Positions 8,258-40,469 of a stretch of 64,000 nt of DNA are shown here, piece by piece. Source of the DNA: Macrostomum lignano (Eukaryota); the NCBI GenBank assembly GCA_002269645.1, contig NIVC01001215.1:86022-150021 (forward strand). The letters run 5' to 3'. A model generated the notes under the pieces. That model had not been told where the DNA came from and made no database searches. It was given only the letters and a program-made list of their open reading frames with translations. Both the position numbers and the translations under genes were made by a program. The first letter of the stretch is position 1, and every line of letters starts with the position of its first letter.

Positions 8258-9109
8258 TTACTTGTCAAAGTCAGAGCCCTCGTCACGCAGCTTTTGCTGC
8301 ACAGCCCGGAAGAACTGCTCTCCGTCGCGCTCGGCAAACTTAAGCATGTCCTGCTGCGCCGCCTTGGCGAAGGCCGGATCCAGCTCCTTAAGCTCGCGGC
8401 CCGTCTGCATGGCCAGCAGCTGGTACATGGCGCAGCGCTCCAAGTAGTAGGAGTAGTGGAAGGCCATGGCCGCGGTTCCCGCTAGTACCAGGTAGCCGTG
8501 GTTGGCCATCATCAGGCAGGTCTTGTCAGGTGCCAGGCAGGAAGCCAGCCGAGCGCCCTCTGAGTCCTGGACGGAGACGCCGCTGTAGTCCAGATCGTAG
8601 GCGATGCTGCTGAGAAAGTACAGGCAGTTCTGGTGCACCATGCGCAGTCGGGAGTCCTGTAGGCAGCTGAGGGCGGTGGCGTACGGACTGTGCAGGTGGA
8701 AGACCGCCTTGGCCTCGGGCCGGGCCTCGTGCAGCGGTCGGTGGATTGTGGCCGCGGACGTCTCGGCGCGACCGTTGCCCTCCACTACCCGACCTGCAGC
8801 GTCGAGGCCGACCAGGTCGGAGGCGCGCACGCGGGACCAGTGCAGGCCGTAGGGCACCAGCAGCATCAGCTCGGCTCCGGAGCCGTCAGCCGATGGCGTC
8901 ATCAGGCTGAGATGGTTGCAGATGCCCTCGTTGTAGCCCAGCTGGTCCAGGGCCCTGTAGGCTGCCGCCAGGTCCACCCTGGCTTGCCAGTTCTGCTGAG
9001 CCGCTGTTGTGGCGCACCGTTTCTCGCTGAGCTGGCGGATGCCGGTGGCCACCGGCTGCAACAGCAGGCGGCACCGCGTCCAGCCGTTGCGTACTGCTGC
9101 AGTCAACAT
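8258..9109 (-). CDS. Class II aldolase/adducin-head family protein with N-terminal mitochondrial-like presequence
   Basis: Intronless 283 aa. Motifs RVDLAAAYR...EGICNHLS...PYGLHWSRVRASDL...IHRPLH..RPEAKAVFHLHSPYATALS...MMANHGYLV retain the Zn-binding His residues. Arg-rich, acid-poor N-terminus. Confidence 0.9.
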   Translation of the reverse strand: MLTAAVRNGWTRCRLLLQPVATGIRQLSEKRCATTAAQQNWQARVDLAAAYRALDQLGYNEGICNHLSLMTPSADGSGAELMLLVPYGLHWSRVRASDLVGLDAAGRVVEGNGRAETSAATIHRPLHEARPEAKAVFHLHSPYATALSCLQDSRLRMVHQNCLYFLSSIAYDLDYSGVSVQDSEGARLASCLAPDKTCLMMANHGYLVLAGTAAMAFHYSYYLERCAMYQLLAMQTGRELKELDPAFAKAAQQDMLKFAERDGEQFFRAVQQKLRDEGSDFDK

Positions 9110-12100: not shown

Positions 12101-13293
12101 AGCTGCTCAAACTAGCTCGAGGTGGTCGGCCTGAGCGGCAATAATTATTCAATTATTTCGGCTTTACCGCTCGCTGGAGCCACCCGGCCCGTGGACTAAA
12201 TGCATTAGTAGTAAAAGTGCACCGAAGGGTGACCGCTACTGAAAGCGCACCGCGTCGGCTAGGAGAAACTGCGGATCGTGTCTGACTCTGCGCTAACATG
12301 CCAAGGGCTCCAGCGAAAAGTGCCAGACCTGCCTGTTGCCGACTTCGTTGTGCTGGTTCCCAGTCCGCGAGAATCTGTCGTCAGGGCTTTGCTAATTGGC
12401 TTCGCCCGCCTTATGCGGACGACTTCCTGCCGGCTGCATTCCTCTTGCGGGAGGGGATTGTCGCTTGAATAATCTTTCTCTTGTTTACCTGTCAGGCTGC
12501 GAATCTTTTAGGGGTGTTAGGAGAGGCTGGGGCTGAGGTGCCGGCCAGGCAGAACACAGAACCATTAGGGAGTACTCTGCAGATAAGCAAGAATTTCCCA
12601 GCTGCCTTGTTCCAGGAATTCAGCTGCGCCATCTGTATCCAACTGTCTTCCTGCGTCGAAACTGAATACAAGGCACCTTGCTGGCTTTCTGCTGAGCAAA
12701 AAAAATTCAGCATAGCATGAACAGCTCCCTCAGGCTTTGCACTAACACTGAGTTCTCAGATTCTGCTGCGAGTTTCCCACTGAGCCATCGATCACTGCAA
12801 CAACAATGGGAAGGCGGGTTGTGGCGACCGCTCGCTGGGGGGACAGAGGGCAAGGGGAGACCCTGCCCGTCCGCTCCGGATCGCACCGGTTTCCCTGCGT
12901 GAGCGCCACCTCACCTCCGACCGTTCATCCCTAAACAGTCTAGCGGGCCAATGGGAGCCGAGCAGGCCCGCGCTGCTCTGCAGCCCCTCCCAGAGGGGGA
13001 TTCTCCCGCGGCCTTCTGCAGCAACTCAGCCCGTGACCCGTCCATAGCAGCCTCGCCAAGCCTTTGCGCACAAGCGAGCTGAACGGCTGTACGCCAGTCC
13101 CCGCGGGCTGATACTTCAGAGAGTTGGAATTCGGCCCACCCGAGCGCCACCGAATTAGCACGGCCATCCAAAGTTTCAGCGGGAATTCAGACACCGACAG
13201 CTCGGATCACCGGCCTGGTCCCAGGGTTTTCCGTCCTCTGTGCGGCAGTTGCAGCGAGGCCTCCAGCCGACCAAAGCCGCATGGGCGTCGGGG

Positions 13294-13690
13294 CCCGCGA
13301 TCGCGCCAGCAGAAGCCGCTAGCCTCCGTCTGAGGCGCCCGCGATCGCGCCAGCAGAAGCCGCTAGCCTCCGTCTGAGGCGCCCGCGATCGCGCCAGCAG
13401 AAGCCGCTAGCCTCCGTCTGAGGCGCCCGCGATCGCGCCAGCAGAAGCCGCTAGCCTCCGTCTGAGGCGCCCGCGATCGCGCCAGCAGAAGCCGCTAGTC
13501 TCCATCTGAGGCGCCCGCGATCGTGCCAGCAGAAGCCGCTAGTCTCCATCTGAGGCGCCCGCGATCGTGCCAGCAGAAGCCGCTAGTCTCCATCTGAGGC
13601 GCCCGCGATCGCGCCAGCAGAAGCCGCTAGCCTCCGTCTGAGGCGCCCGCGATCGCGCCAGCAGAAGCCGCTAGTCTCCGTCTAAGGCGC
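13294..13690. repeat. 44-bp GC-rich minisatellite directly upstream of the LGIC-A start codon
   Basis: About 9 copies of CCCGCGATCGCGCCAGCAGAAGCCGCTAGCCTCCGTCTGAGGCG, ending a few nt before ATG 13696. Confidence 0.95.
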
Positions 13691-13695
13691 CCGAG

Positions 13696-14639
13696 ATGGC
13701 GCCAGCGCGGCTGCTCCTGGTTCTGTTGGCCGTTCTGCTGGCCTGGGTGCAGGTTGCGGACTGCGGCGCCGCACCCAACTACACGAACATCGTGGACCGC
13801 ATCGTGTTCCACATCTTCCGCGGCTACAACAAACACCAGCGGCCCGTGCCCGCTAGCCGGCAGAAGCCGGACGGCACCATAGAAGAGGATTCGACCGACG
13901 TGGACGTCAACATGAAGATTCTCAGCATCAACAAGGTGGACGTCATCAACATGGAGTTTACGCTGGACATGTACCTGCGTCAGTTCTGGAAGGACACGCG
14001 GCTACGCTGGGATCATTACAAAGACTTCAGTTTCTACAACGAGTCCATCGCCATCCCCGCCAAGAAGGAGCACCTGTGGCTTCCAGACCTGTTCTTCCGT
14101 AATGGAAAGGAGGGTTACCTGCACAAAATGACTCAGCCTAACTATCTGATCAGAGTTGAGCCCGACGGGCAGATCCTGTATTCGCAGAAGGTTACCATGA
14201 AGTTCTCGTGCCAGATGCAGTTGCAGACGTTTCCCATGGACACGCAGACGTGCTTCGTGAACATCGGCAGCTACGGATACACCACGAGGAACCTGCTGTT
14301 CAAGTGGAAGCGGGACGGGCTGAAAGACCCGGTGGAGCTGGACGGCTCCATGCAGATTTCCGAGTTCAACGCGCCCGACTTTGCTGAGAGCCACGACTGC
14401 ACTCAGGGCAGCGCGACCAGCACAGGGAGCTACGCGTGCCTGAAGGCGATCTTCAAGCTGGAGCGGCAGCTGGGCAGCTACCTATCCGGTACCTACATCC
14501 CCGCCATCCTCATCGTGGCGGTCTCTTGGCTCAACTTCTGGATCAGTATTGAAGCCGTGCCAGCCAGGGTCTCCCTGGGCCTGCTCACCCTGCTGGGCAT
14601 CCTCACCCAGGGCATGTCAGTCATCAACAACCTGCCCAG
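13696..14639 (+). CDS. Cys-loop anion channel (GluCl/GlyR-like) variable exon A: signal peptide + ECD + TM1-TM2
   Basis: Signal peptide, WLPDLFF, Cys-loop CQMQLQTFPMDTQTC, second loop-C disulfide DCTQGSATSTGSYAC, anion-selective PAR motif. Ends CCC AG|GTAGG (phase-2 donor at 14640). No TM3-TM4 exon seen before 28519. Confidence 0.9.
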
Positions 14640-15596
14640 GTAGGCCATTCTTAGTCAGCTGTTTTCAAGAAAATTGAGGTTACTTTTATTTCTTAATTGG
14701 TGCCCTTTTTGAGCATTTGACGGCTCACTGAAAGTGCCCATCCAGTCTGCTCACTGCGGTCTCTCATGCCAGTTTTCAGTCTTGCCCTGTCAGCAAGTCA
14801 TGCGCCCGTTTCGCGGGCTCAGGCCCAGAGCTTGTGGTGCTCAGCTCACCCGATATCTAGAAATCCAGCTCCTCTCCGCTTACTCACCCAGCCTCTCTCG
14901 GCATCTTCATTCCCTCCTCAATCCGCGGCTGCATAAGTTCAGAAGCGGCCCTAATCCTCAGGCTGAGCCTTCTTTCTCACGGGGACAGGTGAAGAGAGCC
15001 CACCAGTGCGATCTCAAATCATTATTTATGCAAGCCAGGTGGGCCGCCCGAATCCCAGCTGTAGGCGGTCAGAAAGCCGCACCCTGCGCCGGACTGTCGC
15101 CGGAAACGGCCCAGTTTCTCCATAAATGCATCAAAACAGCCAAGCTCAGTTTTTTCATCTGGCCTCTGCAAGCCTTTGAGGAGCTTTTCCTCTAGAAAGA
15201 CACAAGCTTCAAGACGCATTCGCTTCTTGAGTGCCTTCTGAACATGCAGGCTGACGGCTGTTGCGATTGCCTATTAATTTCAGCTCCGATGAGAACTGTG
15301 CTCAAAGCCCCGCTTTTCATCTTTTAATATCCGAATCCCCTTTGAGGGCCTCTTTTTCGAGAAGAGGCAGGGAAAGCTCAGGCCAGATTATCCCCTTGGC
15401 TCCGTCATGGCGCTCTCCTAATCCGTCTTGTGCGGGATCAGAGCGGTGGGATCTGAAACTCCTTGCCGATTTCTCTGCGCCGTTAAAATCCAGACGCCAA
15501 TTATGTTCACTTTTCATCCCACATCATCTCTCACGCACCATCCTATGTTTGCATCCCCTTCTCCCGTCTCCTGCATCTCCTCTCCCCGCCCTCCAG

Positions 15597-15930
15597 CATC
15601 TCATCACACTCTGCTCATTCCACCATCTCATCACACTCTGCTCACCCCACCATCTCATCACACTCTGCTCACTGTTCTATCTCATCACACTGCTCACTGC
15701 TCCATCTCATCACACTGCTCACTCCACACCATCTCATCACACCCTGCTCACTCCACCGTCTCATCACACTCTGCTCATTCCACCATCTCATCACACTCTG
15801 CTCACCCCACCATCATCACACTCTGCTCACCCCACCATCTCATCACACTCTGCTTACTGTTCTATCTCATCACACTGCTCACTGCTCCATCTCATCACAC
15901 TCTGCTCACTCCACACCATCTCATCACACA
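15597..15930. repeat. Degenerate 24-29-bp minisatellite (CCATCTCATCACACTCTGCTCACT)
   Basis: About 12 tandem variant units. Confidence 0.9.
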
Positions 15931-16871
15931 GTGAGGGCAGAGTGTACTTTGTGGAGGCGTTGGTTTCGGTATCCGCGGGCTTTGACTTGCGCAGCCTCCA
16001 AAATCAGTGGCCACTTGCTGAGGATTCGGTTGATTTAATTTCTAAAAATAGATGCACTCTAAATCATTTAGAATTTGAAAAGCTGTCTCTGTTACTCTGT
16101 TGCCATTTATTCCTACCTGTTCTCGTGACAGGGTCGCATGAACTGCAAATATTCCAGAAGCAACTTCACCTCTTCAAAGCTATGGGACTCGTTGCTCTGG
16201 ATTAAAATAGACGAGGACCACTAGCAAAACGTTTTTCCAAAAATTCTTGAAGAAAGTGCTCACTATGTAGGAGCTGTTCCGCTTTTGAGCTTAAAATGAG
16301 AATGACAAAATCCATTGGTTCAGTCCCTGTCCCAATGGATTCAACTCTCCTTTCACCCTGATTTTTAATCCCCGGGCACTCAATAAGCGACGAGATTCGA
16401 CATGGAATTCAAGACCTGGGGCAGTTCTGCACCGACTACGGTACAGCAGCTGCAAACAGCTGTTTCATGCATCAGTTCGACCACAGGTCAATAATCATGA
16501 ATTTATGAAATGCTCAATCAGCCTGTGCGCAAAATGAAGTACATTGAAATAAGCTCAACTGTACCGCTCTAGCCAAAGCCTAGCCAATTATCGAAATTAT
16601 AGAAAGCAAAGTCCTACTCATGCACTCTGCCTGTGTAAGCTGGACTGCTCAGAATGAAGCATTTCAATGCTTCCTACTGAAGTCCCCTGAGCCACCGGCT
16701 TTGCTACACATTCTACTGTAAGTAGTCTGCTTGGTTGAAAATTCACTGGATTTTTAAATGCACCAGCGTGTAAGAAGCTTAATTTTTAGTTAAAGGCTTG
16801 TGCGGACCATTCAGATATGGAATTTTTTTTCATTTCTCAAAGAGGGAAGGTTTGACTCTCCGACGATTCTT

Positions 16872-19008
16872 ACAGTGTTCAGGTCTATGATTGTGTGCTG
16901 TGCACAGTGTTCCATGTCTATGATTGTGTGCTGTGCACAGTGTTCCATGTCTATGATTGTGTGCTGTACACAGTGTTCCATGTCTATGATTGTGTGCTGT
17001 ACACAGTGTTCCATGTCTATGATTGTGTGCTGTACACAGTGTTCCATGTCTATGATTGTGTGCTGTGCACAGTGTTCCATGTCTATGATTGTGTGCTGTG
17101 CACAGTGTTCCATGTCTATGGTTGTGTGCTGTGCACAGTGTTCCATGTCTATGATTGTGTGCTGTGCACAGTGTTCCATGTCTATGATTGTGTGCTGTGC
17201 ACAGTGTTCCATGTCTATGATTGTGTGCTGTGCACAGTGTTCCATGTCTATGATTGTGTGCTGTGCACAGTGTTCCATGTCTATGATTGTGTGCTGTGCA
17301 CAGTGTTCCATGTCTATGATTGTGTGCTGTGCACAGTGTTCAGGTCTATGATTGTGTGCTGTGCACAGTGTTCCATGTCTATGATTGTGTGCTGTGCACA
17401 GTGTTCCATGTCTATGGTTGTGTGCTGTGCACAGTGTTCCATGTCTATGATTGTGTGCTGTGCACAGTGTTCCATGTCTATGATTGTGTGCTGTGCACAG
17501 TGTTCCATGTCTATGATTGTGTGCTGTGCACAGTGTTCCATGTCTATGATTGTGTGCTGTGCACAGTGTTCAGGTCTATGATTGTGTGCTGTGCACAGTG
17601 TTCCATGTCTATGATTGTGTGCTGTGCACAGTGTTCCATGTCTATGATTGTGTGCTGTGCACAGTGTTCCATGTCTATGATTGTGTGCTGTGCACAGTGT
17701 TCCATGTCTATGATTGTGTGCTGTGCACAGTGTTCCATGTCTATGATTGTGTGCTGTGCACAGTGTTCAGGTCTATGATTGTGTGCTGTGCACAGTGTTC
17801 CAGGTCTATGATTGTGTGCTGTACACAGTGTTCCATGTCTATGGTTGTGTGCTGTGCACAGTGTTCCATGTCTATGGTTGTGTGCTGTACACAGTGTTCC
17901 ATGTCTATGATTGTGTGCTGTACACAGTGTTCCATGTCTATGGTTGTGTGCTGTGCACAGTGTTCCATGTCTATGATTGTGTGCTGTACACAGTGTTCCA
18001 TGTCTATGATTGTATGCTGTGCACAGTGTTCCATGTCTATGATTGTGTGCTGTACACAGTGTTCCATGTCTATGGTTGTGTGCTGTACACAGTGTTCCAT
18101 GTCTATGATTGTGTGCTGTACACAGTGTTCCATGTCTATGGTTGTGTGCTGTACACAGTGTTCCATGTCTATGATTGTGTGCTGTACACAGTGTTCCATG
18201 TCTATGGTTTTGTGCTGTACACAGTGTTCCATGTCTATGGTTGCATGCTGTACACAGTGTTCCATGTCTATGGTTGTGTGCTGTACACAGTGTTCCATGT
18301 CTATGGTTTTGTGCTGTACACAGTGTTCCATGTCTATGGTTGTGTGCTGTACACAGTGTTCCATGTCTATGATTGTGTGCTGTACACAGTGTTCCATGTC
18401 TATGGTTGTGTGCTGTACACAGTGTTCCATGTCTATGGTTGCGTGCTGTACACAGTGTTCCATGTCTATGGTTTTGTGCTGTGCACAGTGTTCCATGTCT
18501 ATGATTGTGTGCTGTGCACAGTGTTCCATGTCTATGATTGTGTGCTGTGCACAGTGTTCCATGTCTATGATTGTGTGCTGTACACAGTGTTCCATGTCTA
18601 TGGTTGCGTGCTGTACACAGTGTTCCATGTCTATGGTTGCATGCTGTACACAGTGTTCCATGTCTATGGTTGTGTGCTGTACACAGTGTTCCATGTCTAT
18701 GGTTTTGTGCTGTACACAGTGTTCCATGTCTATGGTTGTGTGCTGTACACAGTGTTCCATGTCTATGGTTGTGTGCTGTACACAGTGTTCCATGTCTATG
18801 GTTGTGTGCTGTACACAGTGTTCCATGTCTATGGTTGCGTGCTGTACACAGTGTTCCATGTCTATGGTTGTGTGCTGTACACTGTTCCAGGTCTATGATT
18901 GTGTGCTGTACACTGCTCCAGGTCTATGATTGTGTGCTGTGCACAGTGTTCCATGTCTATGGTTGCGTGCTGTACACAGTGTTCCATGTCTATGGTTGCG
19001 TGCTGTAC
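16872..19008. repeat. 33-bp satellite (ATGATTGTGTGCTGTGCACAGTGTTCCATGTCT)
   Basis: About 65 units. Palindromic CTGTGCACAG/CTGTACACAG core. Occasional 32-bp variants mark blocks. Confidence 0.98.
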
Positions 19009-19826
19009 TCAGCTCTTCGGTTGAGCTACAGATCATTTAGAAAATTTAATTCAATTAAGTAATTTGCTTAGCAGAAGCTCCTCAAAACCCGGTCCCCAGG
19101 AACCCAGGTGTGGAACAGGCTGATGAGCTGCAGGTCCAACACCGGCAAAAGTCGGTTCAGTCTCTCTCGCATCGACAGTCGCCCAGCCCTGAATTGGTGC
19201 CAAATTGCTTGACAATTTGCTCCAGCGGGGATCGCATGCGCCAAATTGATTAAAGTAATATGGGAGCTTTTTGGCCGAATCCAGTCAGACCCGGAGTTGC
19301 TGAGCGCAGATAAGAGAGGCTGGGCTGAGCTGCAGCTCACCACTCAGAGTGAGGAAGTGGCAGTGCGGACTCACTCTGCTGCTGTTGTCTGCCTGGCAGC
19401 GGTGGGGCTCTAATGGCCGGCCGGTGTGGCTGCTGACAATGCGGGGCAGAGGCCAGGGATAATGAAACCGGGCCGGGGCAGGCCGGATTAAAGCCGGCTC
19501 GCCGAGCCGCTGCGGTCATTGGCTACCAAAGGCCAGGGAAGAGAATGAGCGGGAGAGGAAAATGGGAAGCGGATAAGAGTGTTGTTTGCGCGAGACTGAT
19601 CCCCAGAACAGATATAGGAAATACTCAAATAGCGACTGCAGCCCCGCATGTCCTCCTGGCTCACCGCTACCGGCATTTGAGCTGGGAGCTAAGCTGCTCT
19701 GCTCCCATTAGCCCGGGCTGGCAGGTGCTGACAATTCCTGCTCCCAGCCTCGCACTTGCCGATAGCCGCTCCCAGGAGAGCGCAGAGACAGCCGGAGAGG
19801 AGAGCATCGAGAGCCAGCCATAGGCC
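18213..19826. repeat. Copy 1 of a 1614-bp direct duplication (satellite part + about 820-bp unique segment)
   Basis: Matches 24080-25693 at constant offset 5867. The ORF track gives identical peptides at 19068/24935, 19337/25204, 19488/25355 and 19545/25412. Confidence 0.95.
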
Positions 19827-19854
19827 AGCCATTTTTTTTTTCTCAATTTTTGCA

Positions 19855-20973
19855 ATGGCTGACCGCGACAAACTTATGCACCTGAGCAAGGTGGCTCTGC
19901 AAGCCTTGTGTGCCCACGCTAACATAAGCAGTCGGGGCAACAAGGCCGACCTTGTCAGCGCCCTTCTCGCAGCCCCAGACCAGTCGTGGACAGATTCGCT
20001 GTTGCAGAACATGGAGCAATCTGAGCAAGAAGCCGAAGCAGACGACAACATCAGTACGGAGGCGGCTCGGGAGTCGGCGGCGGGCCTGGACGAGGACATC
20101 GCGAAGGCGGAGAAGGAGATCAGACTGTTGCAGCTACGCAAGGAAGCCGCTCAACTCAAGAGGGAGATCGGAGATCTGCAGCGCGAGTGTCCATCCACGC
20201 GTCCTATGAATCGCGGTGAGTGTGCCAAGCCTGCTGGCCCCAGTTACTTTCCTGATGGGTGTGATGATGCTGGATTAGACCAAGAAGATAATGGCAATGA
20301 GCTGCTTGACAGATTGTTGTCACAGAACAGGGCCAATGAACGGATGGAGTCTTCTGGTAGACGTAAGGCTCTCCTGGTTCGTGATTTCCTCGACGGCTTT
20401 GAGCAGGAAGAGGTGCTGGCTAATGGTTCTGGTGGCCGAATCACTTACAAGAGCAGAAAACCTAATCCAGATAGCATCACGGCAGCGCAGTATTTGGTAG
20501 GCAATTGCAGGCTGATGATGCAGATGATCAAGGATGGTGCCCTGGTGACTAGTAGAAATGGAACTGCCGACACGACTGATTTGATGAATTACTTACGCTA
20601 CTCAATACAGATTGGCGAGCTGTTTGACGGGGGCTTCGGCCTGGCGCAGGTGAATCGTTTTGACGAGGACTACCGCACTAGGCAAGCTGAAACTGGCATG
20701 CGATGGGGCAAGGAGTCTTTCCAACTCGTTGCTAAGCACTTAATCAGAACTGGAACTCCAGCAAACCATGGAGTCAGCAAGTCATTGCCCCAGCCACGGC
20801 AGCAGCGTTTTCAAAAACCAATAGACCCCAAGAGCCTCAGAACGCCAGACGGGGAAGAGATCTGCTTGCACTTTAATCGCCGGGGGTGCTTCCGGTCGAG
20901 CTGCAAATTCCGGCACGTCTGCCGCATCTGTTTCGAGGCCCACCCTGAGGCCAACCATTCGACAAAAAACTGA
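19855..20973 (+). CDS. Ngaro Gag-like ORF with N-terminal SAP-like motif, coiled coil and C-terminal Cys/His finger
   Basis: ATG 19855. LMHLSKVALQALCAHANISSRGNKADLVSALL (SAP-like). IAKAEKEIRLLQLRKEAAQLKREI (coiled coil). CLHFNRRGCFRSSCKFRHVCRICFEAH. Confidence 0.85.
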   Translation: MADRDKLMHLSKVALQALCAHANISSRGNKADLVSALLAAPDQSWTDSLLQNMEQSEQEAEADDNISTEAARESAAGLDEDIAKAEKEIRLLQLRKEAAQLKREIGDLQRECPSTRPMNRGECAKPAGPSYFPDGCDDAGLDQEDNGNELLDRLLSQNRANERMESSGRRKALLVRDFLDGFEQEEVLANGSGGRITYKSRKPNPDSITAAQYLVGNCRLMMQMIKDGALVTSRNGTADTTDLMNYLRYSIQIGELFDGGFGLAQVNRFDEDYRTRQAETGMRWGKESFQLVAKHLIRTGTPANHGVSKSLPQPRQQRFQKPIDPKSLRTPDGEEICLHFNRRGCFRSSCKFRHVCRICFEAHPEANHSTKN

Positions 20974-20981
20974 AGTCTGCG

Positions 20982-22793
20982 ATGCTCTGTTTTAATCCTA
21001 AAATTTTGCCTAATGCTCAGCCTGCTTTAAATTTTAACAATCCTGTCGTTGGCAGTGCAGGGGGTCGCCTGCGTTTTTGTTCGTGGGATTCTGAGCTTGA
21101 GAATGACCCTGATCGGAATTTTATCCTAGACGGCATCGCAAATGGTTTTCGCATTACTGATGGCAAAGGGCTTTGTGAGACTTTTAATGCCAATTACATG
21201 TCTACTTCTACTTTTCATCGCGCTGTTGAGCTGCAAATTAAGGAAGAGATTGAGAATGGCAGGTATTTGATTGTGCCTAAGAAGCCTACGATGGTCAGCC
21301 CTCTGGGAGCAATTCCCAAGGATAACGGGAAGGCTCGACTTATTCATGACTGCAGCACGCCTCCGGGCTACTCGGTAAATGACAACTATACGAAGAAGCT
21401 GAGCCCCAGGTTTGAGTCCGTCAAGAAGGTTGCAGCCTCTATCGGCAAGGGCTGGTTCATGGCAAAGCTTGACTTGTCGCAAGCTTACAGAAGCGTGGCG
21501 ATCCATCCGGATGATTACCAGGCGACCGGCATTGGTTGGCGTTTTAAAGGCAACCGTGATCTGACATGGCTTGTCGACACCCGGCTACCCTTTGGTAGCT
21601 GCGCCTCGGTCGAGATTTTCTACCGGCTTACTCAAGCGGTCAAGAGGATGATGGTGCGACGCGGCGTGGCCAATATTTCGGTTTACCTGGATGATTTTCT
21701 GGTTGCAGCCGAGAGCGAGAAAGAGTGTATGGATGCTCTGAAAGAGCTGATTAAGCTGGTTCGCCAGTTAGGTTTTGGTGTCAATTGGAATAAAGTGGTT
21801 GAACCTACGCAATGCTTGGTGTATCTCGGTGTGAAGATTGATACTGTCCGTGGAGTTCTTAGTGTGCCGGCGGAAAAGTGTGAGGAAATGCGCACCACAC
21901 TGCTTAACTTTTCGCAGCGCAGGCGTCTCTCGAAACGACAGCTTTCGTCGCTTTGTGGCAAGCTCAGCTGGGTCGTCCAGGTGGTGCACGCTGGGAGTTG
22001 CTTCCTAAGACCCCTGTTCGACCTGCTTAATGCCCTGGAAAAGCCACATCACAAAGTGCGTGTGTCCGCTGACACTGTGCGTATTTTACTCTGGTGGCGA
22101 GGTGCCCTTCTGAAGCTGCCTGATTTTCAGCTTTGGAGAAGTTGCACAAACGGCTGGATCATCGAAACCGATGCGAGCAGTGCTGGTGGCGGAGCCATTT
22201 TGCGCAATGGTAGCGGTATGGTGGATTGGCTGTACGTCAATTGGGATCTGGATGCTGGAGGAAAGTTTAAAGACAAGCATATCACGTACAAAGAAGCTAT
22301 TGTTCCGCTGCTGGCTATGGTTCGCTGGGGTGCCTTTTTAAATGACAGTTCGGTCGTGGTCTACTCCGACTCTAGTGCGGCTGTTGGCATGATTAACAGA
22401 GGTTGCTGTCGGCAGCCTGAGTTGCAGCCGCTGTTCCAGACTGCCATGCTCATTGCTGTTAGGCGTGGGGTTGAGGTGCGCGCTTTTCATGTGCCTGGCT
22501 GGTACCATGTCTTTGCGGACCCGTGCTCTAGGCTGCACGCCGTGGACAAAATGCGCGATTTTTTATTTCGGGTGTATGGCTCTGTTGACTGCTGTTTTAA
22601 CGAGATCGCTAGCCATGCTTTCTGCCCTGCTGCCTCCGTTTTTCTAATTTTACAGGCCCTCCGCGCCAGACTCCCGACCGCCTCAGCAAGCGTTGCGCAT
22701 TTATCCTGGGCAATGCCTACGCGCCCCGCACGAAGCGGAGTTACCGGTCGCAGCTCGCGTCTTGGCTGCGATTTTGCAATTCCCGGCACCTGA
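20982..22793 (+). CDS. Ngaro reverse transcriptase + RNase H
   Basis: SPLGAIPKDNGKARLIHD, KLDLSQAYR, RLPFG, VYLDDFL, YLGVKID, ETDAS, ITYKEA, YSDS, FADPCSR. Confidence 0.95.
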   Translation: MLCFNPKILPNAQPALNFNNPVVGSAGGRLRFCSWDSELENDPDRNFILDGIANGFRITDGKGLCETFNANYMSTSTFHRAVELQIKEEIENGRYLIVPKKPTMVSPLGAIPKDNGKARLIHDCSTPPGYSVNDNYTKKLSPRFESVKKVAASIGKGWFMAKLDLSQAYRSVAIHPDDYQATGIGWRFKGNRDLTWLVDTRLPFGSCASVEIFYRLTQAVKRMMVRRGVANISVYLDDFLVAAESEKECMDALKELIKLVRQLGFGVNWNKVVEPTQCLVYLGVKIDTVRGVLSVPAEKCEEMRTTLLNFSQRRRLSKRQLSSLCGKLSWVVQVVHAGSCFLRPLFDLLNALEKPHHKVRVSADTVRILLWWRGALLKLPDFQLWRSCTNGWIIETDASSAGGGAILRNGSGMVDWLYVNWDLDAGGKFKDKHITYKEAIVPLLAMVRWGAFLNDSSVVVYSDSSAAVGMINRGCCRQPELQPLFQTAMLIAVRRGVEVRAFHVPGWYHVFADPCSRLHAVDKMRDFLFRVYGSVDCCFNEIASHAFCPAASVFLILQALRARLPTASASVAHLSWAMPTRPARSGVTGRSSRLGCDFAIPGT

Positions 22794-23656
22794 CGCCGCT
22801 GCGGGCAGAGCCTGTGCACGTGGCTGAATACCTGGCTGAGCTGTCCACCCGGCTGTCAGCCTTTCGGAGTTGCCAGGCGTATGCTAACGCGGTCTCGCTG
22901 TACTTCAGAGCTCTCGGCCGGCCGGACCCGTGCGAGTCGCCGATGGTTAAGCTGGTGCTTCGTGGTCTTCGCCGGTGTCTCAGTCGGCAGCAGCGCTCAA
23001 GGGAGCCATTCAGAGTCGCGGATCTCCTCAAGCTACACGCCCACCTGGACCAACGTCTGAAGAGTGACATCGCGTTCTGGGCAGCAGTTCTGGCAGCCTG
23101 GTGGGGTATGCTGCGAAAAGCGAATGTGACGACGCAATCGGGGCAGCTCGATCTGTGGTGCGACCTGGCAGCATCGAGCATCGTCTTCTCAGAGTACGAC
23201 TGTGAGCTCACTGTGCGGCATTCGAAGACCAACCAGTTTGGCGATCGAGTTCAGCGAGTGTTTCTTCCGAAACTGCCTGATGGAAGCTTGTGTGTCCTGT
23301 GTCCGTTCCGTGCGCTCGAGCGGCAGCTACGGACAAACCGAATCGGCCAGGCGCCGCGTCCGGTTCACCTGTTCTCCACGTGGTCGTCCGCGGGATGGTT
23401 GCCTCTGACGGCTAGCAGGTTTGATAGCCGGCTTCGTTCGCTCTGCACATCGGCGGGTTTGTCGCCACGCGAGTTCACTGGCCACGGGCTGCGGCGGGGC
23501 GGCGCTACGGCAGCCATGCAGCTCGGTGTTCCACTGCCGATGATCAAGAAGCTGGGCGACTGGAAGGGCAACTCAGTGTTTCGCTATCTATCTGTTCGGG
23601 ACTCGGATGCCAGGGCGGCTGTGCATGGCTTGGCTCGTCGGGTTGGCGCGCTCTAA
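22656..23656 (+). CDS. Ngaro tyrosine recombinase (frame open from 22655; no AUG in the first 50+ codons)
   Basis: AYAPRTKRSY...WLRFC N-terminal domain. Catalytic motifs WWGMLRKAN, SKTNQ, GHGLRRGGATAA, LGDWKGNSVFRY. Confidence 0.93.
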
Positions 23657-23700
23657 CTCTCTCTCTCTCTCTCTCTATGTCGAACTTTCTGGTTTGGGTT

Positions 23701-24081
23701 GGGCCAGGCTCGAACCTGCGCCTCTCGTGCCAACTGCCTTGACTTCGTCTCACTGGTTTAATGGTCCGACCGGGCGTAGCTTGGTTGGGTGTTAAACCAG
23801 TGGGGCGTGGCTCTTGTGCGTTGGTGCGGGGGTGGGGGCCGGGCCTTGGTCACGTGCCCGCGGCCTGGGTGGCGGTTTTTTTAATGCGGTGCGGGCTGTC
23901 GCTGACCCGCCAAGCGCGTATTGATTTTTTTTTCTCGCTTTTAAGTCTCCAAGGTTTTTATTCGGCTTTTAGTCCGGTAAATTAAAGTTAATAAATACGC
24001 TCGAATACTCGTACAATAGGGCCAGGCTCGAACCTGCGCCTCTCGTGCCAACTGCCTTGACTTCGTCTCACTGGTTTAATG
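23701..24081 (+). repeat. Split direct repeats B1 (23701-23763) and B2 (24019-24081) of the YR retrotransposon
   Basis: Identical 63-mers GGGCCAGGCTCGAACC...CACTGGTTTAATG separated by 255 bp. Confidence 0.95.
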
Positions 24082-25693
24082 CTGTACACAGTGTTCCATG
24101 TCTATGGTTGCATGCTGTACACAGTGTTCCATGTCTATGGTTGTGTGCTGTACACAGTGTTCCATGTCTATGGTTTTGTGCTGTACACAGTGTTCCATGT
24201 CTATGGTTGTGTGCTGTACACAGTGTTCCATGTCTATGATTGTGTGCTGTACACAGTGTTCCATGTCTATGGTTGTGTGCTGTACACAGTGTTCCATGTC
24301 TATGGTTGCGTGCTGTACACAGTGTTCCATGTCTATGGTTTTGTGCTGTGCACAGTGTTCCATGTCTATGATTGTGTGCTGTGCACAGTGTTCCATGTCT
24401 ATGATTGTGTGCTGTGCACAGTGTTCCATGTCTATGATTGTGTGCTGTACACAGTGTTCCATGTCTATGGTTGCGTGCTGTACACAGTGTTCCATGTCTA
24501 TGGTTGCATGCTGTACACAGTGTTCCATGTCTATGGTTGTGTGCTGTACACAGTGTTCCATGTCTATGGTTTTGTGCTGTACACAGTGTTCCATGTCTAT
24601 GGTTGTGTGCTGTACACAGTGTTCCATGTCTATGGTTGTGTGCTGTACACAGTGTTCCATGTCTATGGTTGTGTGCTGTACACAGTGTTCCATGTCTATG
24701 GTTGCGTGCTGTACACAGTGTTCCATGTCTATGGTTGTGTGCTGTACACTGTTCCAGGTCTATGATTGTGTGCTGTACACTGCTCCAGGTCTATGATTGT
24801 GTGCTGTGCACAGTGTTCCATGTCTATGGTTGCGTGCTGTACACAGTGTTCCATGTCTATGGTTGCGTGCTGTACTCAGCTCTTCGGTTGAGCTACAGAT
24901 CATTTAGAAAATTTAATTCAATTAAGTAATTTGCTTAGCAGAAGCTCCTCAAAACCCGGTCCCCAGGAACCCAGGTGTGGAACAGGCTGATGAGCTGCAG
25001 GTCCAACACCGGCAAAAGTCGGTTCAGTCTCTCTCGCATCGACAGTCGCCCAGCCCTGAATTGGTGCCAAATTGCTTGACAATTTGCTCCAGCGGGGATC
25101 GCATGCGCCAAATTGATTAAAGTAATATGGGAGCTTTTTGGCCGAATCCAGTCAGACCCGGAGTTGCTGAGCGCAGATAAGAGAGGCTGGGCTGAGCTGC
25201 AGCTCACCACTCAGAGTGAGGAAGTGGCAGTGCGGACTCACTCTGCTGCTGTTGTCTGCCTGGCAGCGGTGGGGCTCTAATGGCCGGCCGGTGTGGCTGC
25301 TGACAATGCGGGGCAGAGGCCAGGGATAATGAAACCGGGCCGGGGCAGGCCGGATTAAAGCCGGCTCGCCGAGCCGCTGCGGTCATTGGCTACCAAAGGC
25401 CAGGGAAGAGAATGAGCGGGAGAGGAAAATGGGAAGCGGATAAGAGTGTTGTTTGCGCGAGACTGATCCCCAGAACAGATATAGGAAATACTCAAATAGC
25501 GACTGCAGCCCCGCATGTCCTCCTGGCTCACCGCTACCGGCATTTGAGCTGGGAGCTAAGCTGCTCTGCTCCCATTAGCCCGGGCTGGCAGGTGCTGACA
25601 ATTCCTGCTCCCAGCCTCGCACTTGCCGATAGCCGCTCCCAGGAGAGCGCAGAGACAGCCGGAGAGGAGAGCATCGAGAGCCAGCCATAGGCC
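24080..25693. repeat. Copy 2 of the 1614-bp duplication (33-bp satellite 24080-24875, then unique segment upstream of LGIC-B)
   Basis: Matches 18213-19826. Confidence 0.95.
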
Positions 25694-25700
25694 GATCGCG

Positions 25701-28700
25701 ATGCACTTTTGGTGCCGCCTGCTGCCAGCCCTGCTGGCGGTCGCTGCTGTGTTCGCCACCGAGGAGATTCAGCCGACCAGCGGGTCAGTTCGGCCGAACT
25801 ACACCAACATCGTGGACCGCATCGTGGAGGCGATCTTCCGCGGCTACAATAAGCACCAGCGGCCGGTGGAGATGCCGCCGAAGCCGGACGGCCAGCCGGC
25901 TGAGCCCGCCCCAGACGTGTCCGGCTCCAGCAAGCCGGTGCAGCCATCCACGGCCGTGGACGTCAACATGAAGATTCTCAGCATCAACAAGGTGGACGTC
26001 ATCAACATGGAGTTTACGCTGGACATGTACCTGCGTCAGTTCTGGAAGGACACGCGGCTGCGCTGGGATCATTACAAAGACTTCAGTTTCTACAACGAGT
26101 CCATCGCCATCCCCGCCAAGAAGGAGCACCTGTGGCTTCCAGACCTGTTCTTCCGTAATGGAAAGGAGGGTTATCTGCACACCATGACTCAGCCTAACTA
26201 TCTGATCAGAGTTGAGCCCGACGGGCAGATCCTGTATTCGCAAAAGGTTACCATGAAGTTCTCGTGCCAGATGCAGTTGCAGACATTTCCCATGGACACG
26301 CAGACGTGCTTCGTGAACATCGGCAGCTACGGATACACCACGAGGAACCTGCTGTTCAAGTGGAAGCGTGACGGGTTGAAAGACCCGGTGGAGCTGGACG
26401 GCTCCATGCAGATTTCCGAGTTCAACACACCCGACTTCGCCATTGTGGAGGACTGCACGCAGGGCAGCGCGACCAGCACAGGGAGCTACGCGTGTCTGAA
26501 GGCGATCTTCAAGCTGGAGCGGCAGCTGAGCAGCTACCTGGCCGGCACCTACATCCCCGCCATCCTCATCATTGCCGTCAGCTGGCTCAGCTTCTGGGTC
26601 AATATAGAAGCCGTGCCCGCTCGGGTTACGCTGGGCCTGCTCACCCTGTTGGGTATCCTCACCCAGGCATCCACCGTGATGGCCAACCTGCCCAGGTAGG
26701 GACTGCAGACTCTCCTAGGCATCTACCTTGATGGCCAATCTGCCCAAGTAGCAGGTGCTGATACAACAGGAGGAGGGGGCTGCAGGTCTCACACAGGTCT
26801 GCAGCTCTCACACAGGTAGGAGGGACTGCAGGTCTCACACAGGTCTGCAGGTCTCACACAGTTCTGCAGGTCTCACACAGTTCTGCAGGTCTCACACAGT
26901 TCTGCAGGTCTCACACAGTTCTGCAGGTCTCACACAGTTCTGCAGGTCTCACACAGTTCTGCAGGTCTCACACAGTTCTGCAGGTCTCACACAGTTCTGC
27001 AGGTCTCACACAGTTCTGCAGGTCTCACACAGGTCTGCAGGTCTTACACAGTTCTGCAGGTCTCACACAGTTCTGCAGGTCTCACACAGGTCTGCAGGTC
27101 TCACACAGGTCTGCAGGTCTCACACAGGGCTGCAGGTCTCACACAGGTCTGCAGGTCTCACACAGTTCTGCAGGTCTCACACAGTTCTGCAGGTCTCACA
27201 CAGGTCTGCAGGTCTCACACAGTTCTGCAGGTCTCACACAGGTCTGCAGGTCTCACACAGTTCTGCAGGTCTCACACAGTTCTGCAGGTCTCACACAGGT
27301 CTGCAGGTCTCACATAGGTCTGCAGGTCTCACACAGGGCTGCAGGTCTCACACAGGTCTGCAGGTCTCACACAGGTAGGAGGGACTGCAGGTCTCACACA
27401 GGTCTGCAGGTCTCACACAGTTCTGCGGGTCTCACACAGTTCTGCAGGTCTCACACAGTTCTGCAGGTCTCACACAGTTCTGCAGGTCTCACACAGGTCT
27501 GCAGGTCTCACACAGTTCTGCAGGTCTCACACAGGTAGGAGGGACTGCAGGTCTCACACAGGTCTGCAGGTCTCACACAGTTCTGCGGGTCTCACACAGT
27601 TCTGCAGGTCTCACACAGTTCTGCAGGTCTCACACAGTTCTGCAGGTCTCACACAGTTCTGCAGGTCTCACACAGTTCTGCAGGTCTCACACAGGTCTGC
27701 TACAAAGTGATTAATCAAATGAATCTCCTTTTCCGACTGTTTTAAGCGACCGCTAACTTCACACAAAGGGTGCCCGATTAAAGAGGTCTTGACTGTTCGC
27801 CTCAATGAGTAATAAAGAATCTGGGCAAGGATCGAGGGTGAGGCCGGTGAGATCAAAGTCCTCACGGAGCCCTTGGCGCCGGCGAGTCCGGGCTGAGCAG
27901 TTCTCATTAGCACTGGCTGCCAGATCTCGCTGGCTGATTAAAGACTGCTAAAAACTCAATTTTATCGCCCACGGCACGAGTCCGGGGAGTCTCTGGGGCT
28001 GCTGCGGGGTTGATGGGGCTGCCAGCACTCTGGGCTGAGCTGCTCAGTCTGGCTTAATCCTGGTCCTATCGCTGAGTTCGGCAGAAAGTGCAGAATGAGG
28101 GCGTCATAAATCCCCTCCGCTGAGCTCAGATTAAGTGTCTAAGCTGCTTCTCCCTGTGGCTTCGTCAGCTTTCAAGCCTGCTTGCGGTGGTGGCTCCTGA
28201 TTTATGGAGCAGGGCAGGGTCTAAGCAGCCTCAGGAGTCACTCAGTTTGCTCAGTTCGCCTTCTCAATTCGCCTGTGCCCCAGAAATTTTTCTACAAGGA
28301 CCGCGTCGCGGCAGGCCAATTTGCAGAGGAGAGATCGGAATTTTCAACTCCAAGATTTTGCTGATTTTTGCAAACTTCTAAACTGATAAACTTGAGAATG
28401 CAACACTGCTAATTTTTTCGAGGTTGTGTTGAAAAAAGCAGAAAATATCAGACAGGGCTCTGCAGTGCCTTTTTTATTCAGTCTACCTGACTAACCCTCC
28501 GCCCCGCCGCCTTCACAGGGTTGCCTACATCAAGGCCATCGACATCTGGATCATCGCCAGCATCATGTTCGTCATCGGCGCCCTCATCGAGTTCGCCGTG
28601 GCCTCCTTCCGGGCGCGGCGCACCAAGATGGAGAGCTGGCAGCAGGAGATCCGCAACGTCGTCCGCTCCGAGCTGCAGCGCCTCGCCGTCATCCGCGGCC

Positions 28701-28999
28701 CGCCGCCCGGCCTGCCGTGCGGCCACATCGGCGGCGGCCACGGCTATCCCGGCTTCCCGGAGGAGCTCGAGGATCTCCTGGCTGTCAGCGTTGAAGAGGG
28801 CGGCGTCGGCGGCGGCGTCAGTGGCGGCGGCAAAGGCGGCGCGCCGCCAGCCTCGCCAGTGCCCGCGCCGGACTCGGACATCGACGCGTACAGCCGCTTC
28901 CTGTTTCCCGCCTGCTTCCTGCTGTACAACTGCTTCTACTGGCTGTACTACCTGGTGCTGGTGGTCAAGATCAACCCGCCAAAGGCCGAGGCCAAGTAG
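25701..28999 (+). CDS. Complete Cys-loop anion channel subunit B (GluCl/GlyR-like), 491 aa, 2 exons
   Basis: Exon1 25701-26695 (signal peptide MHFWCRLLPALLAVAAVFA, ECD, TM1-2, AG|GT phase 2). Exon2 28519-28999 (cacag|G GTT GCC TAC: VAYIKAIDIW...TM3, Gly/Pro-rich loop, DIDAYSRFLFPACFLLYNCFYWLYY TM4). The join is in frame. Confidence 0.95.
26779..27700. repeat. 19-bp intronic minisatellite (CTGCAGGTCTCACACAGTT)
   Basis: About 48 units, with variant units containing GTAGGAGGGA similar to the intron 5' end. Confidence 0.97.

Positions 29000-32004: not shown

Positions 32005-40469
<8,465 letters not shown>

What the first reader, a model, noticed from the sequence alone, without database searches (positions are those of the whole stretch)
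13696..28999. Protocadherin/UGT1-like architecture in a Cys-loop ion channel: two variable first exons, one constant exon
Exon A (13696-14639) and exon B (25701-26695) each encode signal peptide + ligand-binding domain + TM1-TM2 and end at the identical phase-2 donor CTGCCCAG|GTAGG. Only one TM3-TM4 exon (28519-28999) was found, and both join it in frame (474 and 491 aa). A is stop-free and diverged from B at many synonymous sites, which argues against a dead fragment. Promoter choice could therefore yield subunits with different binding loops and pore helices on a shared C-terminus. I do not know of this arrangement for pentameric channels.
Basis: partly seen in the sequence, partly recalled or inferred. 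Interest (0 to 1): 0.85.

Follow-up and report, generated by a model that had tools for sequence, protein, structure and literature searches.

The report
Flatworm chloride-channel gene with two first exons
A glutamate-gated-chloride-channel-like gene of the flatworm Macrostomum lignano carries two intact alternative first exons (each encoding signal peptide, ligand-binding domain and M1-M2) ahead of one shared M3-M4 exon: the upstream exon is already joined to the shared exon in the public transcript-based annotation, while the second is under clear purifying selection but has never been seen spliced.

Summary
Exon A (13696-14639) and exon B (25701-26695) both end CTGCCCAG|GTAGG in phase 2. 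The window has one M3-M4 exon, C (28519-28999). A+C is 474 aa and B+C is 491 aa.

The window is Macrostomum lignano Mlig_3_7, contig NIVC01001215.1. The gene belongs to the flatworm SmGluCl-2-like chloride-channel clade.

The exact 474-aa A+C protein is a transcript-derived annotated product (PAA70662.1/PAA71747.1, Mlig000841.g2/g5) at two other copies of the locus, and both keep the A-B-C order.

B+C is not annotated anywhere. However, B is intact in all four copies examined. Its 11 new changes are all synonymous (P about 1e-7).

A and B are an old pair (dS 0.4-0.6 in the flanking parts). A 462-nt central tract has been homogenised by gene conversion, so binding loops A, B, D and E are identical. 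They differ in the N-terminus, the loop-C stem, M1 and M2 (positions 2' and 15'-20').

In this copy only, a tyrosine-recombinase retrotransposon (19827-24064) sits between A and B. The annotated transcript here splices A into it, giving a truncated 381-aa product.

Verdict: probably a real two-variable-exon, one-constant-exon channel gene, with B→C still unproven.

The parts
13293..13706 (+). 44-nt minisatellite (9.4 copies) running up to and over the ATG of exon A. The start codon lies in its last, degenerate unit.
   Evidence: The last 100 nt before the ATG are identical in the two other copies of the locus.
13696..14639 (+). Variable first exon A: ATG, signal peptide, whole extracellular domain, M1 and M2. 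Ends with a phase-2 donor, CCCAG|GTAGG.
   Evidence: Identical to residues 1-315 of PAA70668.1 and of the 474-aa PAA70662.1/PAA71747.1.
13900..14361 (+). Gene-conversion tract in A. Its partner in B is 25956-26417. 8 differences in 462 nt.
   Evidence: Patchwork sharing of A states among B copies.
14640..28518 (+). A-to-C intron of this copy (13,879 nt). It contains exon B and the retrotransposon.
16872..19012 (+). 33-nt minisatellite (65 copies). The left breakpoints of both rearrangements seen at this locus fall inside this array.
18200..19826 (+). P1: extra copy of B's native upstream region. 99.75% identical to P2.
19827..24064 (+). Tyrosine-recombinase (DIRS-order) retrotransposon body. 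It holds a gag-like ORF with SAP motif (19855-20973), an RT ORF (20982-22793) and a tyrosine recombinase ORF (22814-23656). It is absent from the two other copies.
20008..20209 (+). Cryptic exon inside the gag ORF, read out of frame. It follows the acceptor TTGCAG| and forms the 66-aa tail plus stop of the annotated 381-aa product Mlig026840.g2.
24065..25693 (+). P2: native upstream region of exon B, made of the 33-nt minisatellite (24080-24879) and 814 nt of unique sequence. It is present upstream of B in every copy and is the candidate B promoter or leader.
25701..26695 (+). Variable first exon B: own ATG, own signal peptide, extracellular domain with a 13-aa N-terminal insert, M1 and M2. 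Same phase-2 donor as A.
26696..28518 (+). B-to-C intron (1,823 nt) containing a 19-nt minisatellite (26826-27700).
28519..28999 (+). Constant exon C: M3, intracellular loop, M4 and stop codon (28997-28999).

Best explanation
This is one copy of a Macrostomum lignano anion-selective Cys-loop subunit gene of the flatworm SmGluCl-2-like clade. It is built as two tandem, paralogous 'variable' first exons and one 'constant' last exon.

**Layout.** Each variable exon carries its own start codon, signal peptide, complete extracellular domain, M1 and M2. Each ends in the same phase-2 donor. Neither has an acceptor, so transcription starting at A or at B can only splice forward to C (M3, loop, M4).

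**Shown.** A to C is used. The exact 474-aa product is a transcript-derived annotated protein at two sister copies of the locus.

**Inferred.** B to C is also used, probably from a start site in B's conserved upstream region P, or less likely by spliced-leader trans-splicing. The inference rests on three points: B has been kept open and under purifying selection, it keeps a working-looking donor, and C is the only in-frame partner.

**Consequence.** The two subunits would share every known glutamate-contact residue. They would differ in the N-terminal extension, the loop-C stem, M1, the pore-lining 2' residue (Ser versus Thr) and upper M2 (15'-20'). The expected diversification is therefore in gating, conductance, allosteric pharmacology or assembly, not in agonist identity.

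**History.** A and B are an old duplicate pair. Their middle part is repeatedly homogenised by gene conversion.

**This copy.** A tyrosine-recombinase retrotransposon, together with a 1.6-kb duplication of B's upstream region, has recently landed between A and B. A cryptic acceptor inside it captures A's donor in the annotated transcript. That predicts a truncated product with the extracellular domain, M1 and M2 only.
For: **Architecture**.

**Identity of the locus**: the window equals NIVC01001215.1 with 0 mismatches over 26.5 kb.

**Family**
- Pfam Neur_chan_LBD at 2e-45 and Neur_chan_memb at 1e-26.
- About 50% identity to SmGluCl-2 and other flatworm GluCl-like proteins.
- Cys-loop, loop-C Cys pair, PAR motif, and the loop A Arg, loop D Arg, loop E Ser, loop B Tyr and loop C Thr/Tyr are present in both A and B.

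**A to C**
- The exact A+C sequence equals P0124 (PAA70662.1 and PAA71747.1, Mlig000841.g2/g5).
- It is placed at L003 and L002.
- The annotation is RNA-based.
- The L002 intron is 12.8 kb, beyond the pipeline's 10-kb merge rule.

**Layout conserved**: A-B-C in L003 and A-B-C-B-C in L002.

**Selection between copies**
- A: 6 of 6 variable codons are synonymous.
- C: 4 of 4 are synonymous.
- B: 13 of 15 are synonymous. The 2 amino-acid changes are two-nucleotide switches to the A state, which indicates conversion.
- 11 B changes are new states not found in A, and all are synonymous. The expected synonymous fraction is 0.23, so P is about 1e-7.

**Deep A/B divergence with both ORFs open**: dS 0.40-0.64 and dN/dS 0.33-0.46 outside the conversion tract.

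**A-type is an old conserved type**: the M. lignano paralogue P0029 shares A's state at 19 of 25 sites where A and B differ.

**Neither exon looks degenerate**: outgroups side with B at 11 sites and with A at 9.

**Retroelement and trapped transcript**.
Against: - No B+C protein or fragment is present in the 5.8-billion-cluster protein database. This holds for a search with the whole 491-aa product, a search with exon C alone, and an exact look-up.
- The only annotated B product is a 261-aa frameshifted CDS in this copy.
- No B gene is called at L002 or L003.
- B's promoter is unknown. The sequence just upstream of its ATG is purine-rich and would be a poor trans-splice acceptor.
- The annotation kept only dominant isoforms (TACO --isoform-frac 0.75), so absence is weak evidence, but it is still absence.
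- Reads cannot distinguish the A and C exons of the window from those of L003, because they are identical. A to C is therefore not shown for this copy itself.
- The A-to-retroelement model could owe something to the pipeline's transcript-merging rule, although the junction is an exact GT...TTGCAG pair.
Confidence: 0.6

Rival explanations
1. The gene has a single isoform, A+C. B is a silent duplicated exon stranded in the intron and does not contribute to any complete subunit.
For: - Only A+C is annotated.
- No B+C product exists anywhere searched.
- The middle of B is kept like A by gene conversion.
Against: - Conversion from A cannot preserve the B-specific parts (N-terminus, loop-C stem, M1-M2). 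These differ from A at dS 0.4-0.6 yet contain no stop or frameshift.
- 11 new substitutions among B copies are all synonymous.
- B keeps the family-consensus residue at 11 sites where A has changed.
- The donor and the first ~100 nt of intron are identical in all four B copies.
Confidence: 0.2
2. B is expressed, but only as a truncated protein (extracellular domain, M1 and M2). If the intron is retained, the stop TAG follows the donor at once. Such a protein could act as a modulatory or dominant-negative partner. Selection would then act on that product, not on B+C.
For: - AGG TAG ends the ORF exactly at the donor.
- The annotated B product here is a short one.
- The truncated A product Mlig026840.g2 shows that such transcripts are assembled.
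Against: - A conserved canonical donor identical to A's, 1.8 kb from a strong acceptor in the right phase, is hard to explain if it is not used.
- No family member in the searches ends after M2, except for evident mis-predictions.
Confidence: 0.1
3. The layout is an assembly artefact. A and B belong to two separate genes or haplotypes, and A's own M3-M4 exon was lost.
For: - The assembly is highly redundant (PMC5730564).
- The contig holds an inverted second copy of the locus.
- This copy has a 99.75% identical 1.6-kb repeat.
Against: - The same A-B-C order is found in three assembled copies, one of them on another contig. The copies differ in minisatellite lengths, in the retroelement and in point substitutions.
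- A and B are far too diverged in their flanks to be alleles.
- An RNA-derived product joins A to C.
Confidence: 0.03

Closest known systems
UGT1A and clustered protocadherin loci (variable first exons spliced to shared constant exons). Recalled from general knowledge, not tested here.
   Same: - Tandem paralogous first exons, each with its own ATG and a donor but no acceptor.
- One shared downstream exon.
- The upstream variable exon skips the downstream one. This is shown for A to C.
   Different: - There are only two variable exons.
- The constant part is a single exon encoding two transmembrane helices of the same domain, so the splice boundary cuts through the channel domain at the M2-M3 linker.
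- Separate promoters are not shown.
- Use of the second variable exon is not shown.
- One copy (L002) has duplicated the B-C unit, so the constant exon is not strictly unique.
Nematode avr-14 (GluCl alpha3A/3B) and C. elegans unc-49. The avr-14 facts come from PMC8841521. The unc-49 facts come from general knowledge.
   Same: One Cys-loop chloride-channel gene yields subunits that share one half of the protein and differ in the other half, through alternative use of large duplicated exon blocks.
   Different: This is the mirror image. In those genes the N-terminal ligand-binding part is shared and the C-terminal channel part alternates, through alternative 3' exon sets. Here the N-terminal part plus M1-M2 alternates and M3-M4 is shared, through alternative first exons.
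Schistosoma mansoni SmGluCl-2 (Smp_015630)
   Same: - It is the closest functionally characterised relative, at about 50% identity.
- It forms a homomeric glutamate-gated chloride channel (PMC3757052).
- It has the same loop A arginine solution for glutamate binding (PMC4338433).
- It has two isoforms that differ near the N-terminus.
   Different: - SmGluCl-2 is encoded in a single exon.
- Its isoforms are functionally indistinguishable and differ by a short N-terminal segment, not by a whole duplicated exon.
Mutually exclusive exons in insect RDL, GluCl and nAChR alpha6, and alternative signal-peptide first exons of GABRB3. Recalled from general knowledge.
   Same: Duplicated exons within a Cys-loop subunit gene are used to diversify subunits.
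   Different: Those alternatives replace short internal segments or only the signal peptide. Here about two thirds of the subunit is replaced.

Membership tests
Cys-loop / pentameric ligand-gated ion channel, anion-selective GlyR/GluCl-type | Neur_chan_LBD plus Neur_chan_memb domains | tested here: met
   Pfam 2.2e-45 and 1e-26 on the A+C product. Both are above the curated cut-offs.
Cys-loop / pentameric ligand-gated ion channel, anion-selective GlyR/GluCl-type | Cys-x13-Cys loop, second Cys pair in loop C, four transmembrane segments, PAR motif before M2 | tested here: met
   CQMQLQTFPMDTQTC, DC...YAC and AVPARV are present in both A and B. M3 and M4 lie in exon C.
Flatworm (lophotrochozoan) glutamate-gated chloride channel, SmGluCl-2-like | Loop A Arg (FFRNGK) plus loop B Tyr, loop C Thr/Tyr, loop D Arg and loop E Ser, as listed in PMC4338433 | tested here: met
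   All are present and identical in A and B in the alignment with SmGluCl-2.
Flatworm (lophotrochozoan) glutamate-gated chloride channel, SmGluCl-2-like | Channel opened by L-glutamate | not testable with these tools
   Needs expression and electrophysiology.
Variable-first-exon / constant-exon gene (UGT1A or protocadherin type) | Tandem paralogous first exons, each with its own ATG and 5' splice site and no 3' splice site | tested here: met
Variable-first-exon / constant-exon gene (UGT1A or protocadherin type) | Every variable exon is spliced to the same constant exon in mature mRNA | tested here: inconclusive
   A to C holds, from the exact transcript-derived product. B to C was not found in any resource. 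It is inferred only from selection.
Variable-first-exon / constant-exon gene (UGT1A or protocadherin type) | A separate promoter in front of each variable exon | not testable with these tools
   B's upstream region P is conserved in all copies. No start-site data are available.
unc-49 / avr-14 type alternative splicing | Shared N-terminal part with alternative C-terminal channel parts | tested here: not met
   The polarity is the opposite.
DIRS-order tyrosine-recombinase retrotransposon (the insertion at 19827-24064) | gag-like ORF, reverse transcriptase and tyrosine recombinase in that order, with no DDE integrase | tested here: met
   RVT_1 at 6.9e-17. Phage_integrase at 1.2e-5, just below the curated cut-off. 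SAP at 1.3e-4.
DIRS-order tyrosine-recombinase retrotransposon (the insertion at 19827-24064) | Own terminal repeats (inverted, or split direct repeats) | tested here: not met
   - Only 28 nt precede the gag ATG.
- The flanking 1.6-kb direct repeats are host sequence, present once in the uninterrupted copies.

The most novel reading that the evidence does not exclude
Both first exons are used in vivo, from separate start sites, so one flatworm gene makes two Cys-loop subunits. These would have the same glutamate site and the same M3-loop-M4, but different N-termini, M1, pore 2' residue and upper M2. That would be the first variable-first-exon/constant-exon pentameric channel gene, and the mirror image of unc-49 and avr-14. 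The two products may co-assemble into heteromers encoded by a single locus. The locus would also still be evolving: gene conversion between the variable exons, duplication of the B-C unit in one copy, and retrotransposon capture of the A donor in another.
Probability: 0.55. Interest if true: 0.62.

Novelty: new variant of a known kind. Interest (0 to 1): 0.5.

Why it matters
**Where channel subunits can be split.** If both isoforms exist, a pentameric channel subunit can be cut at the M2-M3 linker and recombined by splicing. One module (extracellular domain, M1 and M2) is swapped against a fixed M3-M4.

**A natural experiment.** This tests which properties reside in M1/M2 and the N-terminus and which reside in M3/M4. 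It complements the nematode cases, where the other half is swapped.

**Relevance to drug work.** Flatworm GluCls are studied as anthelmintic targets. M. lignano is a transgenic model in which isoform-specific knock-outs are feasible.

**Annotation.** Exon B is currently either unannotated or annotated as a frameshifted fragment. The copy in this window is annotated as a truncated protein because of a retrotransposon.

**Limits.** There are only two variable exons, the arrangement is lineage-specific in a highly duplicated genome, and the second isoform is unproven.

Tried and rejected
1. **A hidden M3-M4 exon between A and B.** tblastn found none in the window or in L002.
2. **Exon C peptide search.** I looked for any M. 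lignano protein and its N-terminal partner. Only three distant non-Macrostomum hits came back, so it was uninformative. The exact-sequence look-up was what found A+C.
3. **The 1.6-kb repeats as retroelement terminal repeats, which would make B's upstream region transposon-derived.** Rejected. The same sequence sits once, directly upstream of B, in the copies that lack the element. Its left end also lies inside a host minisatellite.
4. **Other genomic copies of the element.** An exact look-up of the RT ORF found nothing.
5. **The paralogous locus of P0029.** It is not in the contig collection. Its three database models all stop being channel-like after M2, so they say nothing about its partner exon.
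6. **Reconstructing the annotated 261-aa B product.** A 13-nt gap allows 72 possible sequences, so I abandoned this.
7. **The same architecture in other flatworms.** I compared 27 related proteins for pairs with identical C-termini but different N-termini. None were found apart from short N-terminal insert variants in Schistosoma.
8. **Literature.** There was no hit for 'alternative first exons' plus 'Cys-loop', none for the gene names, and nothing relevant for pLGIC alternative promoters.
9. **L003 in Python.** It could not be loaded, so it was analysed through the alignment tools.

Full report
**1. What is in the window**

Exon A (13696-14639, 944 nt) and exon B (25701-26695, 995 nt) are open from an ATG to the same donor, CAACCTGCCCAG|GTAGG, in phase 2. 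Exon C (28519-28999, 481 nt) follows a strong acceptor with a UACUAAC-like branch motif and a long pyrimidine run.

A+C is 474 aa and B+C is 491 aa, without stops. tblastn of both products against the whole window finds no second M3-M4 segment.

**2. Where it comes from and what family it is**

The window is identical to Macrostomum lignano assembly Mlig_3_7 (GCA_002269645.1), contig NIVC01001215.1, with 0 mismatches over 26,514 nt. Window position equals L001 position plus 3695.

The product has Neur_chan_LBD and Neur_chan_memb domains. Its best relatives are flatworm GluCl-like subunits, at about 50% identity to Schistosoma SmGluCl-2.

Both A and B carry these features:
- the Cys-loop, the loop-C cysteine pair and the PAR anion motif;
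- the residue set that Lynagh et al. (PMC4338433) tie to glutamate recognition in lophotrochozoan GluCls: loop A Arg in FFRNGK, loop D Arg, loop E Ser, loop B Tyr and loop C Thr/Tyr.

SmGluCl-2 itself is a single-exon gene (PMC3757052). The intron at LPR|V is thus a feature of this lineage.

**3. A and B are an old pair with a homogenised middle**

The divergence between A and B is mosaic:

| Region (A codons) | dS | dN or dN/dS |
|---|---|---|
| 69-222 (central tract) | 0.07 | dN 0.004 (8 nt differences in 462) |
| 27-68 | 0.64 | not computed separately here |
| 223-315 (loop C stem, M1, M2) | 0.40 | dN/dS 0.33 |

The signal peptides are barely alignable. Similarity ends 5 nt after the donor.

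Among the four B copies available, several variable sites in the central tract simply toggle between the B and A states. Gene conversion between A and B is therefore ongoing.

Loops A, B, D and E are consequently identical in A and B. The amino-acid differences are (prime numbering by my alignment to GlyR, from general knowledge):
- the signal peptide;
- a 13-residue insert in B before the first beta strand;
- AESH versus IVE at the loop-C stem;
- four M1 positions;
- M2 2' (Ser versus Thr);
- M2 15'-20' (GMSVIN versus ASTVMA).

**4. Is A joined to C?**

The exact 474-aa A+C sequence is in public databases as PAA70662.1 and PAA71747.1 ('hypothetical protein BOX15_Mlig000841g2 / g5', UniRef A0A267FF10).

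The Mlig_3_7 annotation is built from RNA-seq (StringTie/TACO), a de novo transcriptome and TransDecoder. It is not an ab initio prediction (PMC5730564).

The product is placed at two other copies of the locus:
- L003, an inverted copy on the same contig (record 51026-79662);
- L002, contig NIVC01001142.1.

A caveat is the pipeline's rule of merging an ORF transcript with a downstream poly(A) transcript within 10 kb. Two points argue against that explanation. The junction is exact at donor and acceptor. And the L002 model spans a 12.8-kb intron, beyond the rule's limit.

I take A to C as shown for the locus. It is not shown for the window copy itself, whose A and C exons are identical to those of L003.

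**5. The layout is conserved**

- L003 has A, B and C in the same order without the retroelement.
- L002 has A-B-C-B-C. A unit of about 5.96 kb is duplicated in tandem. The unit consists of the 33-nt minisatellite, B's upstream region, B, the intron, C and about 1 kb of 3' flank.

These copies differ by point substitutions, minisatellite lengths and rearrangements. They are independent witnesses and rule out a simple mis-join.

**6. Is B a live exon?**

Directly, I could not show it:
- No B+C protein or fragment turns up with the full product, with exon C alone, or by exact look-up.
- The only annotated B product is a 261-aa CDS in this copy (25701-26499). It needs a 13-nt gap and ends at an out-of-frame TGA.
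- The annotation kept only dominant isoforms (--isoform-frac 0.75), so a minor isoform would be lost.

Indirectly, the evidence is good:
- Between copies, A has 6 variable codons and C has 4, all synonymous.
- B has 15 variable codons, of which 13 are synonymous.
- The 2 amino-acid changes in B are two-nucleotide switches to the A state.
- Eleven B changes are new states absent from A, and all are synonymous. The expected synonymous fraction is 0.23, so P is about 1e-7.

Further indirect evidence:
- Outside the conversion tract, B has stayed open over dS 0.4-0.6.
- B retains the outgroup residue at 11 sites where A has changed, against 9 the other way. Neither exon is decaying.
- The M. lignano paralogue P0029 shares A's state at 19 of 25 sites where A and B differ. 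The A type is therefore an old, conserved type and not a recent wreck.
- B's upstream region P is conserved in front of every B.

C is the only in-frame partner for B. B to C is thus the most economical reading. It remains an inference.

**7. What is special about this copy**

Between A and B lies a 4.2-kb element (19827-24064) containing a SAP-containing gag-like ORF, an RT ORF (RVT_1 6.9e-17) and a tyrosine recombinase ORF. It is a DIRS-order retrotransposon.

It is flanked by a 99.75% identical 1,629-nt direct repeat (18200-19826 and 24065-25693). That repeat is host sequence. It occurs once, directly upstream of B, in L003 and L002. Its left end lies inside the 33-nt minisatellite.

Both junctions show short microhomology (AGCCAT, and TGGTTT..TG). 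The event looks like a duplication-insertion and not a clean recombinase integration.

The annotated gene here (Mlig026840.g2, PAA70668.1, 381 aa) is exon A spliced from 14639 to a TTGCAG| acceptor at 20008. It then reads the gag region out of frame to a stop at 20207-20209. If that model is real, this copy makes at least some truncated product with the extracellular domain, M1 and M2 only.

**8. How it most likely works**

| Step | Status |
|---|---|
| Two first exons, one last exon, compatible phases | shown |
| A to C | shown by annotation |
| A, B and C all under purifying selection | shown |
| B is transcribed from its own start in P and spliced to C | inferred |
| The two subunits differ in gating, pore or allosteric properties and perhaps in cell type, not in agonist | inferred |
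| The two subunits may co-assemble | inferred |
| The retroelement acts as a splice trap for A in this copy | probably shown |

**9. Comparison with what is known**

The logic resembles UGT1A and protocadherin loci. Membership is only partly met: there are two variable exons, B's use is unproven and the promoters are unknown.

Within the channel family, the known large-block alternatives (avr-14; unc-49, general knowledge) have the opposite polarity. I found no description of this polarity in the literature searched or in 27 related flatworm proteins.

**10. Verdict**

This is a real and already partly annotated gene with an undescribed second first exon. I class it as a new variant of a known kind. 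Interest is moderate. A junction-read search would settle the open point quickly.

Noticed in passing
L003 (NIVC01001215.1 51026-79662, reversed) versus window 3696-30209: The same contig holds an inverted second copy of the whole locus, including the upstream glutaredoxin and aldolase_II genes. The centre of symmetry lies about 1.3 kb left of the window start. Exons A and C and B's upstream region are identical to the window, but the retroelement is absent and B differs at 7 sites. This is either a real recent inverted duplication or a palindromic assembly join of two haplotypes or homeologues.
   Followed up: partly
L002 (NIVC01001142.1) 8165-19305: A third copy of the locus has the order A-B-C-B-C. 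A unit of about 5.96 kb is duplicated in tandem. The unit runs from the 33-nt minisatellite through B's upstream region, B, the intron and C to about 1 kb of 3' flank. Its left breakpoint is again inside the 33-nt minisatellite. The second B-C unit lies downstream of a complete C exon, so it would need its own promoter to be expressed.
   Followed up: partly
window 18200-25693: The retroelement insertion comes with a 1,629-nt duplication of host sequence. There is microhomology at both junctions and no terminal repeats of the element's own. Its 3' end carries an exact 63-nt direct repeat (23701-23763 and 24019-24081) whose sequence looks like the T-arm half of a tRNA on the opposite strand.
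   Followed up: partly
window 25701-26499: The deposited annotation has a separate 261-aa 'gene' on exon B. Its coordinates only fit if 13 nt are skipped, giving a frameshift and an out-of-frame TGA at 26497-26499. This suggests that a de novo transcript containing B exists but differs from this genomic copy. Whether that transcript continues into exon C could not be seen.
   Followed up: partly
proteins P0029, P0125, P0126 (UniRef, M. lignano): An A-type first exon exists elsewhere in the genome. It is about 80% identical to A, and M2 through GMSVINNLP matches A except for two conservative changes. All three database models lose channel similarity right after M2, as if its M3-M4 partner were also far away or shared.
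   Followed up: partly
window 13293-13706 and 25694-25700: A's start codon lies in the last degenerate unit of a 44-nt minisatellite. The 7 nt between B's upstream region and its ATG (GATCGCG) match the core of that unit. This hints that the two exons once shared a 5' leader from which the A-side minisatellite grew.
   Followed up: no
window 30829-62251: Minisatellite density is very high. At least 14 further arrays are present, with periods of 11-45 nt. Examples are 33613-36027 (12 nt, 196 copies), 44543-46115 (12 nt, 131 copies) and 56883-58674 (23 nt, 77 copies). Many create long spurious ORFs on both strands.
   Followed up: no
window 49355-52981 (+): An uninterrupted 1,208-codon ORF with only weak, sub-threshold TPR matches. 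It contains a 24-nt in-frame repeat at 51629-52016.
   Followed up: partly
window about 6200-7307 (+) and 8258-9109 (-): The annotated upstream neighbours are a thioredoxin/glutaredoxin-domain gene and a class II aldolase-domain gene. Both are repeated in the inverted copy.
   Followed up: no
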